A stretch of 64,000 nt of DNA from Glycera tridactyla (taxonomy: Eukaryota). The position numbers and the translations under genes were made by a program. Under the pieces are notes generated by a model. The model ran no database searches, had not been told where the DNA came from, and was given only the letters and a program-made list of their open reading frames with translations. The DNA lies in NCBI GenBank assembly GCA_965644265.1, contig OZ286466.1:4092001-4156000 (forward strand). The letters are read 5' to 3'. Positions 30,601 through 42,600 of the stretch are shown here, in pieces. Position 1 is the stretch's first letter; every line of letters starts with the position of its first letter.

Positions 30601-33600
30601 CACAGTGAATGTTTTTCACTGACATACTTCACATTTCAATCCATTTTTGACATCTCCTACAAGAAGATAAAAGCCACTGAGGCGGCTGGGCATTCCAAGT
30701 GAAGAGAAATCATGCGACGGAACATCATCCTTATGTCCGTGAGTGGAGAGAAATCAAGTCCTCCACTTTATGTTGGACTTGTATGACAAATAATTCGGTG
30801 AATACATTCAATGTGGACTTCTAGAGAAATCTGAGGCGTTTAATCTTTGCGAGTGCCATGACGTCCTCTGTCTCTGCCTGCTGTGGAGGTGTGAAATGAT
30901 GTAGGCCGTGTAGAGAGGGCGCTGCAGCAAGCGGTGGCAGAGTGCCCCCTACCTGTTGACGGCATTCAACATTTCAATCATGACGAGAGTAGAAAGAGCC
31001 ATGCTTGGTGGCTTGGGGTGTTTGAACACCTCGCACTCGATACCCTTGAAGCGCTCGTCTTGTACCAAGCACTGAGACTGGTGAGTCTACACCAACAGGG
31101 AAAATACAAAACAATAACCATCAATCGTTTTCAACATGTACAACTGACGCCTAATACCACCAGGTGGCAGCATCCCCCATTTGTCTCGAAGCTTTTGCCA
31201 CCGATGCACACCACCTGGCTTGAGTTTGTGAATCCTGCGATGTATTTGGGAGAATGTGACCAGTTTGGAGAGAAGAGCTGCGTTTGCTGCAAACCCTGGA
31301 TATAAACACTTGAGTCATTAGAATTAGCACACATGTCACTAAAAGCGTACACATACAACAAAGATACAATGGCCAGTAATCATCTGCCACCACCTGTCTT
31401 CCCGCAACCACAAGAGAAATAATCTGATAAAAGATGAGATGGGAATAGTAATGCTATAATGAGAAGAAAATGAAGGTTTAGAACATGCACCGTGGTGCTG
31501 ACCTCAACATGCAGGTCAACGTGTCAGTAACTTGATTAGTCGACGCAAGTGACAAGTTCTTAGTGCCCGGAAGACAGGTAGAGTGGCATCAGTGTATTGT
31601 TAACACTGAAAAGACGGGAAATGATGAATCGATTTATAGATTGATGTGGGAAATCAAGGTTAATGCCACACAGAGTGGAAGGGAACAAAACAAAGATGGA
31701 ATTGTGAGCCTGAAATGATTCATGGATCACCGGGAGCACAATTGGATATTTCTTGACCTGGAGAATATTGCAGCAATAGCTGAGAGCCTGGGAAAGCCAT
31801 TCTCAGGGTGAATCATTGTGATCATAATGATCTGGAGTCTCTGTAGCCTCCCACATATTTTCCAACCTTGTATGCTATATCACTACCATTAATAAATTAA
31901 TTCATTTAAGAAATGTGAATATGAAAGCATCAAGAATGAAAGTAACAGATGGTTGATACACATCCTGAAACTAGACAAATCTTTCGTTTTCTCCAGGTTT
32001 TGTTTTCTCCAGAATGGGCTTATGGCTCCGTAAGTGTAGCAATACCTTGAATAAACCAATCTTGGAATGGTGTACAAAGGCCATGAATACAAAAAGGTTT
32101 GAAAAGTTGGAATAGATAGTGCAGTATAGATAGAATGTATTGATAAGAGTGTGGATGAAACAGTGCAAACTACTTTCTATAGATCAGCTACATATCAGTC
32201 AGTCCGTCGACTCTAGAGCAACATTCTCGTACAAAAAGCTAAGGACAGCCTAATTGTATGCCACCAAAATCTCATGGAGACATCGCAATCATGACTGCTA
32301 TCTGTTTTCTGAGAGAGAAAATGTGCAAAACTGACCTGACAGACAGATGTGAGAGGTGAGAAGTGGGATGAGGAAGTTAGTTGGAAAGCGACTAGTGAGA
32401 ACTACGACTATTGGTGGCGCCACTGTACTATGTTCTGGTTTCGTGAGACAAGGGTAGAAGTAACCAGGACATATTACAACAACTGCTCCCTTTATCTGAC
32501 TGTAACTGCTTATAACATCGACGCCATGATCTTCTTAATATGACACAATTATGGTAATGAGAAGGAGGCCAAAATTACCAATTCTTAGCATCGAATTGAA
32601 AATAAGGCTTCAGAAACTTCTTATTGAGATAGTACCAGTGATGACCTTTTATACACTGGGCATGCTCATGTGCGCACGCTTCAAAAGTTTAAATTTCAAT
32701 TTCAATTTCTAATCTTCATATGAGTTTTTGGAGAAGGTACAATCAGATCTTGGGAGACTGACTATTCTTATATGAGACACTCTATATGAGACACTCTGGT
32801 TCTAGCACATAGAGTCATGGAACAGGCTCTGAAGACAGGAGTGGTCAACTTGAATTTGTGATTATCCAATGAAGTAACACATCAAAACCAGTGGTTTCTT
32901 GTGTTTTCATCATGAGTAATTGAGAAGAATTCACTCAAAAAAATAATGATAATGTTTCTATTATACGAATCAAAAAATATTTTCTTCATGGACCTTTTGT
33001 CCCAAAATACCAGGAATTCCAGTGAAAATTTAGTTCAATATAATCGATTCCTGATAAATCTGTGCAACAGGTTGGTTTAGTTGAGTTGAGATTTAACAGC
33101 ATGTATCAACCAAGAGGAATATGTATGCTGTGATCCTCATGAGTATTTTATTCTCTATCCTGAGCAAGCAGTGACCTAAGAATGCCTCATATAAATACTG
33201 ATCTAATCCCGCCACGATGTACTTCTGCCTACTGGTGCAGATGCAGAGATTTCAAGTGATGAATCGCCTGTGGTGGAGGGGCGTGACGGGGGGCGTGGTT
33301 TACCTGTTCAGGGCGTTAGCCATCTCGATCACGACCAGGACAGACAAGGCCATGGTCATGGGTTTAGGATGCGTAAAGACACCACAGTCTATATTGGGGA
33401 ACATCCTGGGTTCGGCCGGACACTGCATGTGATGCGTCTGCAGCCGGCAGTCAAGACAGACACAAACAGAGAAGAGAAAAACACACACATGTTAGAAGTG
33501 ATGGTGGATTATTCGCTGACGACCGCCACAAGTGGCTCGACGGGAAGTGGTAGAAAACGATGATCGAGATGATATCAACGCTGGATGTCTGTTTCATGCG

Positions 33601-39600: not shown

Positions 39601-42600
39601 TCATAAAATAGGGGAACAGACTGAAAAGTGACAAGTTAGCGACTACGGAGACAATCATCTCCAGCTGGCTGACACAAACAGCGCGCTGAAATGGATAAAT
39701 TCTGTAAGGTTAGTACAAACAATGTCTACATGTGGGTTTGACCTTGCGCCAAACTAAGCTGACCTTCATCAACTCTATCAGTGTTTGTTGGTAGCAAAAC
39801 AAGTACCGGTAACTACTAAAGAACAAAATGTGACAAAATCATTAAGAGAAACGAGGGTCAACCAAATTTGGTGTCAACTTGGTGCAAAAATGAAAATGAG
39901 AGGAACAGTGTGATCAAAACTGGTGCAAACAATGCAGAAGTTCAACTTGATATTTAACTAGAGAGACTGATGAAAAAACACCAGAGAATCAACAAGAATG
40001 AAAGGCTTTAGTTGGAAACAGAGCCTTTCTGAAGTTGGCGCGATGAAGTGAAGAGTATTCTAGCAAAAACTACAACTGCATAACCATGGGATTAGAAATG
40101 AAGAAAATAAAAGGAGGATGTGCTATAACATCAGCTTTGTGCCATCCCGAGGAAAGCAGCTCTTAAATAAACTGCAATTAAAACATTTCTCCGGATACTT
40201 CCATCAACAGAGATACGATGCTGACATCTCGGCATGCCGATTTATATACATGGGAAGCAATCATTTCTGAAAAGCTCTGAAGAATTATCCGAGCTCAATC
40301 TATTCCACAAATCTGATGAATGACCTGAATATAAAAATCTCATCATTCCCGAAATTTCACATCTAGGAAATGATATATTTTGGAAACTTTTGAATGATTG
40401 CAACTGCAAGGTAGAGCTTTCACAGTCCCCCGACATTTATTGAGTTGAGATGGCCATTGCCGATGTGAAAAAAATAAGAAAGACTAATCAGAATATATAT
40501 ATTTGTGTGCATATACAAGGGATTGTATGGGTGATAATCAAAATAAAGTCTGAGGGTCACTCTTGAGGTCAACGGATGTGGGGTATTTTACCTGTTGACA
40601 GCATTGAGCATTTCAATGGTGACCAAAACGGACAAAGCCATAGACATGGGCTTTGGGTGGTCAAATACTTTGCATTTGACACCCCTGAACATCGATTTAG
40701 CTTCAGCCGGGCATTGAAGGTGATGAGTCTGGTGTAAGGAGAGCAAGCAGCCAAACCCTATTACTACATCGCTCCCAATAAACGTCACAATTAAAACTCG
40801 TAATATCCAAATCAATTCAATAAAATAAAAATTCAAGAAGCGCCATCCACTGGAGAAGAACAAAATCAAGATGTCGAAATACTTGTCCGACACCTTGTTT
40901 CCCCTGATGATGCAACCATCGTTGGCTGTTCAAAAAAGGGAGGGAGGGGGCGACGCGAGGAAAAACATTTTGTGAGACGGAACAACAAACTGGAAAAAAC
41001 ATCAAATCTGTAATGTATGATGCAAACCTGGTAAAATGGAAATGAATGAAAATATGTATATCAGTTGCTTAGCAAATTTCACAAAATTCACCACCAATTG
41101 AACGATTGAGACAAAGTACATCAGTAACGAAATGCTTGCCAATCATCTGGCATCAATGTGCACGGCCACATCAAAGTGACACTGTCGTATTCCATCACAT
41201 CCCCACCGGCTGACTTCCAACACATGAAGATGCTTGTGCTAGTCCAGTTTTGTTCAATGGTCATAATTTGGTTCTCCAATGCCACAGTTTCATCTCTCGT
41301 TCAGATTACAATCCAGTGATGGGAAATTTGATCGAAATTTATATTCTTGAAAGATGAGATCCGAGGGAAATATGGCACTTACCACCAACACTGAAAGCTA
41401 CTGAAAACAATTTCAGAAAAATCTTTCAGAAAGTCTGAATTCTTTCTTTCTCGGGGATTTTTGAGATAACAGGCTATAAGATATCAGGACAAAACCAACC
41501 AGAGGAATTTCAGAGATGCAGGCATGAAAATCATACATTTTGTTATTTAGAGAAAACACTTGAATAACTCCAACTGGTGGTATGGTCCTGCTGAAATGTC
41601 TGAGCGAATTTCACAATGTGTTCATGAAACAATTGAGGCAGCATATTTTGCATCATTGGGTGCCGGTGCTCACACAAAGACTGCATGCACAACGATACTC
41701 CATTCTGAGTGTGCAAGCGCAAAAACACAATATCTTTATTTTTTTAATCCAATCGGGGAGACCCCATCACCATATCTTACTGAATTAGTATTTTTTTACT
41801 TCATTATGGCTTTCTACTTCCTACAGCAAACTGACATTCGGAAGTAAAATCACTCTCAAAAAAACAAATTTGTTAAATTTCCATTCAGTCAGTTTTGGTA
41901 ATTTTGTAAGGATTGAACTGATTATTTAGTAAGAATATAAAAGGACCAGAATATATTAAGACATGCCTGAGATACTGATAAATGAGTCTGAACCAAAGAT
42001 GATAATGTGGTGAACCAAATTCATGGAAGAAATAATCCACTGGCTGAGGATGGATGGAATATGGGCTGAAAAATATATACGCAAAAACAAACTGCAACCG
42101 TTCTCTGCCACTCCGCAAACCTCAAACCCAGGAAATATTGTGAATGAAATCCTTGAAGGCTCGCAATATCCAAGAAGTTTGTATCTCATGAATTTTGCAT
42201 TATCTTTGCCCGGATTTTGTCATTGGAGTGCAGAGAAGAGTCACAATTTCAAACAGTCAACTCTTGCCGGGTTATTGGAAGACGTGCAGTACGATTCTGT
42301 GCAAAAGATGGAGTTACCTGTTAAGAGCATTTAACATTTCAATGCAGACGAGGGTGGAAAGTGCCATTGCATTAGGTATGGTACTTTTAAATATTTTACA
42401 CTTGACGCCTTTGAAGTTTTGAGGTTCGAGACGGCACGCGGTGTGATGCGTCTGTTAACAGAAGTTGCACAATTCATTCACTAGCATCACACGGAGGGTC
42501 ACCTGCTGTGGCGATTGGCGGACATAGCGAGAAACGGGATGTGTACTGTAGACACAGTTCAAGGACAACATGGGCAAGCCAAATTAAAGTCGGGACGACT

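What the first reader, a model, noticed from the sequence alone, without database searches (positions are those of the whole stretch)
30953..42451. Seven-member mutually exclusive exon array for the luminal L7-8 loop and helix M8
Seen: seven paralogous exons (six of 134 nt, one of 137 nt), each with AG/GT ends, starting in phase 0 and ending in phase 2, with no stops. Including two or none shifts the frame. All keep both loop cysteines and the IEM motif, while the loop between the cysteines varies most. Known: the segment matches rabbit SERCA1a about 871-915, with the C876-C888 disulfide and Ca2+ site-I ligand E908. In SERCA2b this loop is redox-regulated by ERp57/ERdj5 and contacts the luminal tail. 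Inference: purifying selection on all seven copies, with variation tuning luminal regulation or kinetics.
Basis: partly seen in the sequence, partly recalled or inferred. Interest (0 to 1): 0.93.

Follow-up and report, generated by a model that had tools for sequence, protein, structure and literature searches.

The report
Seven alternative exons in a calcium pump
One calcium-pump (SERCA) gene of a probably annelid animal carries seven intact, long-conserved copies of the exon for a luminal loop and a calcium-binding helix, most likely used one at a time; this enlarges a two-copy switch that other worms, molluscs and their relatives also have.

Summary
On the minus strand lie seven paralogous exons, six of 134 nt and one of 137 nt. 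All have AG/GT ends, the same phase and no stops, and they lie between constitutive SERCA exons ending at 43862 and starting at 25382. They align to rabbit SERCA1a 871-914 and keep C876, C888 and E908.

The reading as a mutually exclusive exon array under purifying selection is well supported, though no transcripts of this species were available.
- Synonymous sites are saturated while dN is 0.09-0.48. Differences by codon position are 0.27/0.21/0.56.
- Only inclusion of a single copy keeps the reading frame.
- Other animals carry arrays of 2, 5 and 7 copies at the same place.
- Spliced mRNAs of close relatives carry exactly one copy, of differing types.
- RefSeq isoforms of Haliotis, Mizuhopecten, Lingula, Lineus and Tubulanus differ only in this exon (A versus B type).

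The array is therefore a lineage-specific expansion of an old lophotrochozoan two-exon switch. That switch is visible in database annotation, but I found no paper describing it.

Copy v1 has no orthologue and is the least supported. How one copy is chosen is unknown: no docking/selector RNA pairing was found. One conserved 24-nt intronic element remains unexplained.

The parts
43862..43947 (-). Constitutive exon before the array (end of M7 and start of the L7-8 loop, ending in YYQL); its donor is at 43862
   Evidence: 84-87% nt identity to L080, L074 and L001
42318..42451 (-). Variant exon v1 (134 nt). It is the most divergent copy, with the M8 motif LVCIEM.
   Evidence: No orthologue among the fetched loci (best 57% aa) and no word-sharing fragment in the protein database.
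40592..40728 (-). Variant exon v2 (137 nt, one extra codon between the cysteines)
   Evidence: nearest L080 copy 3, 77% aa, dN 0.16
39054..39187 (-). Variant exon v3 (134 nt, A type)
37654..37787 (-). Variant exon v4 (134 nt, A type)
   Evidence: 86% aa identity to L080 copy 6 and to the exon in the spliced mRNA L052.
35816..35949 (-). Variant exon v5 (134 nt, A type)
33304..33437 (-). Variant exon v6 (134 nt, A type)
   Evidence: 89% aa identity to L074 copy 1 and to the exons in the spliced mRNAs L078 and L076.
30953..31086 (-). Variant exon v7 (134 nt, B type, motif CLVQDERF...[11 protein letters not shown]). The B type is last in every array whose 3' end was recovered.
   Evidence: Orthologues are L080 copy 7, L018 copy 5 and L074 copy 2. 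The same type occurs in the mRNA-derived proteins P0289, P0346, P0329 and P0369.
28329..28354 (-). Conserved intronic element (AAAAGCTGTTGACTGATGCTG...) in the intron after the last variant; function unknown
   Evidence: No local fold and no significant pairing to exon ends.
25265..25382 (-). Constitutive exon after the array (its first base completes the Ser/Arg codon, then ISENQSL..., end of M8 and M9); its acceptor is at 25382
24403..24600 (-). M10 exon. Reading through its internal donor after KFTDG gives a hydrophobic TM11-like tail.

Best explanation
The stretch is a cluster of seven tandemly duplicated, mutually exclusive exons in the single SERCA (P2A Ca2+-ATPase) gene of a lophotrochozoan, probably an annelid. 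Each mature mRNA takes one copy between the exon ending at 43862 and the exon starting at 25382. Each choice gives a pump with a different second half of the luminal L7-8 loop (871-898) and a slightly different M8 helix around the site-I ligand E908. Transcripts with no copy or with two copies lose the frame and are probably removed by nonsense-mediated decay (inferred). The cluster descends from an old two-member switch (A type PAEP..., B type CL[AV]QDE...) that is shared with molluscs, a brachiopod and nemerteans. In this lineage the A type was multiplied. Shown here: the anatomy, long-term purifying selection on the copies, homologous arrays in other species, and one-copy mRNAs and exon-swapped isoforms in relatives. 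Inferred: that this species uses all seven copies, that the choice is specific to tissue or condition, and that the variants tune luminal regulation (redox partners, a TM11-like tail) or Ca2+ affinity and turnover.
For: Anatomy and phases. SERCA1a alignment to 874-914. Selection among the copies: dS saturated, dN 0.09-0.48, codon-position differences 0.27/0.21/0.56, and 0 of 5000 neutral simulations reaching the observed aa identity. Selection across species: dN 0.08-0.16 with dS above 1.3 or saturated for v2-v7. Only single inclusion keeps the ORF. Arrays elsewhere: L080 has 7 copies, L018 has 5, L041 has 5, and 14 further loci have 2; all have AG/GT ends, and wherever a B-type copy was recovered it lies last. 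Spliced metatranscriptome mRNAs have exactly one copy between the same flanks (L052, L078, L076, L026, L061). mRNA-derived proteins have identical flanks but different exons (P0291 versus P0303/P0299). RefSeq isoforms of Haliotis rufescens, Mizuhopecten, Lingula, Lineus and Tubulanus differ only at about 873-913, apart from the C-terminus. In the exon tree v7 groups with the B types of annelid-like arrays and of nemerteans (94/95 support), and v2-v6 fall in the A clade.
Against: No transcript of this species could be examined, so use of each copy is inferred. Its proteins and ORF fragments are not in the databases searched. v1 is very divergent and has no orthologue; it may be newly lost or rarely used. 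No mechanism for choosing one copy was found: inverted repeats are at chance level, and duplex scans show no site above composition effects. RefSeq isoform models are partly computational. Functional differences between variants are untested.
Confidence: 0.8

Rival explanations
1. Only a subset of the copies (for example one A type and the B type v7) is spliced into mRNA. The others, above all v1, are silent or decaying duplicates that have not yet accumulated disabling mutations.
For: v1 has no orthologue and no similar fragment anywhere, and it has the highest dN to the others at 0.30-0.48. v4, v5 and v6 have poor pyrimidine tracts before their acceptors. Most other lophotrochozoans manage with two variants.
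Against: Synonymous sites between nearly all copies are saturated, yet every copy keeps its ORF, its splice sites and 19 invariant residues. Neutral simulations give about 25-44% survival of the ORF per copy, and they never reach the observed protein identity. L080 keeps seven intact copies and L018 five. mRNAs of relatives carry v4-, v6-, v3- and v7-like exons.
Confidence: 0.15
2. The extra copies act mainly as regulated 'poison' exons. Double inclusion shifts the frame and lowers pump output through nonsense-mediated decay, so the protein differences between variants are not the point.
For: Any inclusion of two copies gives a stop within the second copy.
Against: A poison exon needs no conserved protein sequence. 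Here first and second codon positions are strongly constrained, and relatives make full-length proteins with different variants.
Confidence: 0.04
3. The repeats are an assembly artefact, such as haplotypes or collapsed paralogous genes laid out in tandem.
For: None specific. There is an assembly gap at 44603-44976, outside the array.
Against: The copies are only 54-80% identical in DNA and are separated by unrelated introns of about 1.3-2.4 kb. The same architecture occurs in independent assemblies of other species.
Confidence: 0.01

Closest known systems
Two-variant (A/B) alternative L7-8/M8 exon of lophotrochozoan SERCA genes, as annotated in RefSeq isoforms (Haliotis rufescens, Mizuhopecten yessoensis, Lingula anatina, Lineus longissimus, Tubulanus polymorphus, oysters)
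   Same: Same gene, same exon boundaries and same residues (about 871-914). v7 is the B type and v2-v6 are A type. Both are combined with alternative C-termini.
   Different: Those genes show two variants; this one has seven (six non-B copies plus one B). I found no paper that describes even the two-variant switch. The literature I read describes only C-terminal splicing of invertebrate SERCA (PMC3527596, PMC6987452).
Seven- and five-copy arrays in unnamed metagenome-derived animal contigs (L080 = JAAUXT010054138.1, L018 = JAAUXW010303938.1, L041 = JAAUXW010113762.1)
   Same: Same position, same exon length, same phases; the B type lies last in L080 and L018. L080 and L018 also share the 24-nt intronic element.
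   Different: They are different species (70-84% nt identity in exons). Copies are only partly one-to-one with those of the window, so some duplications are lineage-specific.
Tandem mutually exclusive 'exon 11' copies (2-4) in arthropod Na+/K+-ATPase alpha-subunit genes (Drosophila, Daphnia, Balanus; PMC3793950)
   Same: A P2-type ATPase whose gene carries tandem, similar exons used one at a time.
   Different: A different pump and a different exon, with at most four copies. I did not establish which segment of that protein is encoded.
Dscam1 and Mhc exon clusters of arthropods (large mutually exclusive arrays; own knowledge)
   Same: Tandem homologous exons with one chosen per transcript. Several clusters in one gene give combinatorial isoforms; here there is also an N-domain cluster and two C-termini.
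   Different: The array is much smaller. The docking-site/selector RNA pairing that governs the Dscam clusters was looked for and not found.
Vertebrate SERCA2a/2b C-terminal splicing
   Same: Alternative splicing of a SERCA gene that alters elements on the luminal side. The window's gene also has a 2b-like choice between a short tail and a hydrophobic TM11-like tail.
   Different: Vertebrates do not swap the L7-8/M8 exon. Their diversity there comes from three separate genes.

Membership tests
Tandem-duplicated mutually exclusive exon (MXE) cluster | Adjacent exons in one gene that are homologous to each other | tested here: met
   Seven copies with 52-89% aa identity form one repeat family
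Tandem-duplicated mutually exclusive exon (MXE) cluster | Same or near-same length, same phases, own splice sites | tested here: met
   134 nt six times and 137 nt once; phase 0 in, phase 2 out; AG and GTA at every copy
Tandem-duplicated mutually exclusive exon (MXE) cluster | Joint inclusion or complete skipping destroys the reading frame | tested here: met
   Simulated splicing gives early stops for 0, 2, 3 and 4 copies
Tandem-duplicated mutually exclusive exon (MXE) cluster | Mature transcripts of this gene contain exactly one copy, and different copies occur in different transcripts | not testable with these tools
   No transcripts of this species were available. In relatives the feature is met: one-copy mRNAs and isoforms that differ only in this exon.
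SERCA (P2A-type Ca2+-ATPase) | P-type signature DKTGT and hinge motif [12 protein letters not shown] | tested here: met
   [10 protein letters not shown] in exon 63379-63155 and [14 protein letters not shown] in exon 48212-47791
SERCA (P2A-type Ca2+-ATPase) | Closest solved relatives are SERCA1/2; the M8 glutamate (E908) and the L7-8 cysteine pair are present | tested here: met
   phmmer hits only SERCA1/SERCA2 chains, E 2e-9, aligned 874-914. The residues are invariant in all seven copies.
SERCA (P2A-type Ca2+-ATPase) | Full-length architecture (E1-E2 ATPase, N domain, hydrolase and C-terminal cation-ATPase domains) | tested here: inconclusive
   The 5' third of the gene lies outside the window. 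The exons present are 87% identical to the full-length proteins of Platynereis and Capitella, which carry all the Pfam domains.
Docking-site/selector (competing RNA structure) control, as in Dscam1 | One conserved docking sequence complementary to a selector next to each variant | tested here: not met
   Inverted repeats are at chance level. The best duplex windows pair equally well with everything. The one conserved intronic element pairs no better than its shuffles.

The most novel reading that the evidence does not exclude
One annelid SERCA gene encodes a combinatorial set of pumps: seven L7-8/M8 variants, several N-domain variants and two C-termini. In this reading the seven variants are deployed in different tissues or conditions and differ measurably in Ca2+ affinity, turnover or luminal redox control. 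The choice would be governed by the conserved 24-nt element in the last intron. That would be a naturally evolved isoform series for the least understood regulatory face of the pump.
Probability: 0.3. Interest if true: 0.75.

Novelty: new member of a known kind. Interest (0 to 1): 0.6.

Why it matters
Reviews and papers on invertebrate SERCA that I could read describe one gene with splicing at the C-terminus only. This array shows that lophotrochozoans also swap the luminal L7-8 loop and the M8 helix, the segment that holds the redox-sensitive cysteine pair and a Ca2+ site-I ligand. Some annelid-like lineages have raised the number of choices from two to five or seven.

The variants form a ready-made series shaped by selection. 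It could be used to ask what the L7-8 loop and the residues beside E908 contribute to Ca2+ affinity, turnover and luminal regulation.

It also dates the A/B switch to before the split of molluscs, brachiopods, nemerteans and annelids.

Tried and rejected
1. Docking/selector RNA pairing.
   - The repeat finder inverted pairs were at chance level.
   - RNAduplex scans of the first intron against the flanks of every variant gave only composition-driven windows.
   - The conserved 24-nt element, tested against variant flanks and exon ends in three species, paired no better than its shuffles.

2. What the 24-nt element might be. No local hairpin was predicted and there was no Rfam match in 24000-44500; the only hit was a chance-level mir-304 match.

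3. Steric or intron-type exclusion. This is rejected from the anatomy: introns are 1.3-5.6 kb and all are GT-AG.

4. Transcripts or proteins of this species.
   - The profile search for short fragments found only genomic ORF fragments of other animals.
   - The full-length search found no entry closer than 89%.
   - The v1-only search found nothing.

5. A scaffolded alignment of exon peptides on a long protein, meant to serve as a search query. MAFFT scattered the short peptides, so I dropped it.

6. The look-up of encoding contigs for P0172 and P0218 returned no DNA because the sample files were too large.

7. A first full-library HMMER search with the large exon returned mostly protist proteins and fragments. 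It gave no close full-length animal SERCA.

8. Relic or eighth copies: none were found.
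Full report
**What is there.**
The window carries most of a SERCA gene on the minus strand. It runs from at least 63999 (M4 region, [10 protein letters not shown] exon at 63379-63155) through the large M5-M6 exon (48212-47791) to a terminal exon at 24600-24403.

Seven paralogous exons lie between the exon that ends in YYQL at 43862 and the exon that starts at 25382 (its first base completes the codon left open by the preceding exon, then ISENQSL). 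They are at 42451-42318, 40728-40592, 39187-39054, 37787-37654, 35949-35816, 33437-33304 and 31086-30953.

Six are 134 nt and one (v2) is 137 nt. Each follows an AG and is followed by GTA. Each starts in phase 0, ends two bases into a codon and has no stop. The repeat finder groups exactly these seven into one family, and a permissive tblastn finds no relic or eighth copy.

**What the exon encodes.**
phmmer of copy 4 against all PDB chains hits only SERCA1 and SERCA2 (E 2e-9) and aligns to SERCA1a 874-914. The exon therefore covers residues 871-914 plus two bases of codon 915, that is, the second half of the luminal L7-8 loop and most of helix M8.

Nineteen of 44 positions are invariant across the seven copies. 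They include the two loop cysteines (876, 888) and I-E-M with E908. Mean pairwise identity is 0.45 between the cysteines, 0.58 in the loop after them and 0.86 in M8. Within M8 the varying positions are 903, 906, 910 and 913, on either side of E908.

In mammalian SERCA2 the loop cysteines are a redox switch acted on by ERdj5, SEPN1, ERp57 and TMX1 (review PMC7603117). That E908 is a site-I ligand is established structural knowledge that I recall rather than tested.

**Are the copies alive?**
Between most pairs of copies the synonymous sites are saturated (NG86 gives no finite dS), while dN is 0.09-0.48. Differences per codon position are 0.27, 0.21 and 0.56.

I applied random substitution at the observed nucleotide divergence. 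An open frame survived in only 26-44% of trials, and protein identity was 0.33-0.54, against an observed 0.61-0.89. None of 5000 trials reached the observed identity.

Against the nearest copies in other species, v2-v7 show dN of 0.08-0.16 with dS above 1.3 or saturated. These are old duplicates that have been kept as coding sequence.

v1 is the exception in one respect. It is intact and keeps all the invariant residues. However, it has no orthologue in any fetched locus (best 57% aa) and no similar fragment in the protein database.

**Is it a mutually exclusive array?**
Simulated splicing shows that only a single copy gives an open frame. Skipping all copies gives a stop after two codons, two or three copies give stops inside the array, and four copies return to frame but contain internal stops.

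No transcripts of this species were available, so I turned to relatives.

- *Short ORF fragments.* A profile of the seven peptides retrieved 223 short ORF fragments, mostly single genomic exons, from many animals.
- *Metagenome loci.* The same profile retrieved 80 metagenome-derived loci.
- *Tandem arrays.* Seventeen of the 81 loci fetched in all hold tandem copies of this exon with proper AG/GT ends. L080 has seven, L018 five, L041 five, and the rest two.
- *Order of types.* In most of these arrays (12 of 17) a PAEPRMF-like 'A' copy comes first and a CL[AV]QDE-like 'B' copy comes last. The B copy is last in every array whose 3' end was recovered. v7 is the B copy of the window.
- *Spliced mRNAs.* Spliced metatranscriptome contigs have exactly one copy between the same flanking peptides. 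L052 is a full-length 1009-aa mRNA whose flanks are almost identical to the window's, with a v4-like exon. L078 and L076 carry v6-like exons and L026 a v3-like one.
- *B-type exons in mRNAs.* Full-length or near-full-length proteins derived from other mRNAs carry v7-like exons (P0289, P0346, P0329, P0369).
- *Same flanks, different exon.* P0291 and P0303 are identical over 250 residues before and 75 residues after the exon but carry different exons.
- *Named species.* RefSeq isoforms differ only at about 873-913, apart from the alternative C-terminus. This holds for Haliotis rufescens X1 versus X2/X4, Mizuhopecten X1 versus X2, Lingula X1 versus X3, Lineus X1 versus X2 and Tubulanus X1 versus X2.

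Mutually exclusive use of this exon is thus established in the clade and inferred for the window.

**Origin.**
Over 581 residues of constitutive exons the nearest named proteins are Platynereis Atp2a (87%), Capitella (87%) and Helobdella (86%), ahead of scallop and Lingula (85%). The species is probably an annelid, but that is not proven.

A maximum-likelihood tree of 66 exon peptides has few columns and many unresolved forks. It places v7 with the B copies of L080, L018, L074 and L039, with two mRNAs, and with the nemertean B variants (support 94/95). v2-v6 fall in the A clade together with the mollusc, brachiopod, Platynereis and Capitella A exons. v1 sits on a long branch, so its placement is unreliable.

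The simplest history is an A/B pair in the lophotrochozoan ancestor, followed by repeated duplication of the A type in some annelid-like lineages.

**How one copy is chosen.**
This is not resolved. Introns are 1.3-5.6 kb and all are GT-AG, so steric or spliceosome-type exclusion does not apply.

I looked for a docking site with selectors. Inverted repeats are at chance level. Duplex scans of the first intron gave only windows that pair with everything.

Only one intronic stretch of the cluster is conserved between the window and L080 above shuffle level. It is a 24-26-nt block at 28354-28329, in the intron after v7. The same 20-mer lies after the last variant in L080 and in L018.

The block contains the reverse complement of the last eight bases of five of the exons. 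Even so, its predicted pairing with exon ends or variant flanks is no better than that of shuffled versions. It has no local fold and no Rfam match. It is a candidate regulatory site of unknown kind.

Introns just after v3 and v4 also share about 55 nt. I did not pursue this.

**What is known.**
Searches of the paper library for SERCA together with mutually exclusive exons, molluscs, annelids or tandem exon duplication found no description of this switch. The SERCA evolution paper and an oyster study describe only C-terminal splicing in invertebrates (PMC3527596, PMC6987452).

The closest published parallel in a P-type pump is the tandem 'exon 11' of arthropod Na+/K+-ATPase genes, with two to four copies (PMC3793950).

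The two-variant form is, however, already visible in RefSeq isoform annotation. The finding is therefore a new and enlarged member of a known kind, not a new kind.

**Verdict.**
Two caveats remain: use of all seven copies (v1 especially) and any functional difference between them are inferred.
- Interest is moderate to high for pump physiology and for the evolution of splicing.

Noticed in passing
window 57271-57185, 57074-56988, 55896-55786 (minus strand): At least three tandem copies of an N-domain exon (...[19 protein letters not shown]) lie in the same gene. This is a second probable mutually exclusive cluster, also recorded in notes s1-325533 and s1-325551.
   Followed up: partly
window 24600-24403 and 2561-2517 (minus strand): The gene has two C-termini. 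Reading through the donor after KFTDG gives a hydrophobic TM11-like tail, of the same type as in Capitella P0287 and mRNA P0280. A distal exon about 22 kb downstream encodes VKELVDPMTGERRMV, which resembles the tail of mRNA L052.
   Followed up: partly
window 28354-28329 (minus strand); L080 16877-16902; L018 5019-5039: A 24-26-nt intronic block is conserved in three species after the last variant exon, with unconserved flanks. No fold, no Rfam match and no significant pairing were found.
   Followed up: yes
window 39053-38995 and 37653-37590 (minus strand, introns just after v3 and v4): About 55 nt after the donors of v3 and v4 (and partly v5) align well, although synonymous sites inside the exons are saturated. 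The shared stretch includes the palindromes CACCGGTG and CATCGGTG. It may be a shared regulatory element.
   Followed up: no
proteins P0320 vs P0423 (Lingula) and P0307 vs P0426 (Lineus): RefSeq isoforms also differ at residues 847-867 in Lingula (the exon before the array) and at 187-204 in Lineus. This suggests further alternative exon pairs in lophotrochozoan SERCA genes.
   Followed up: no
proteins P0271, P0275 (labelled contaminant, Acipenser sinensis) and P0273: These public gene models contain two copies of the L7-8/M8 exon in one protein, which are probable annotation errors. In P0273 the two copies are of different types, as expected from reading through an array; in P0271 and P0275 a larger stretch of the protein appears to be repeated.
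   Followed up: no
window 44603-44976: A run of 374 N (assembly gap or masked stretch) lies in the intron upstream of the exon at 43947-43862. I left it as it is.
   Followed up: no
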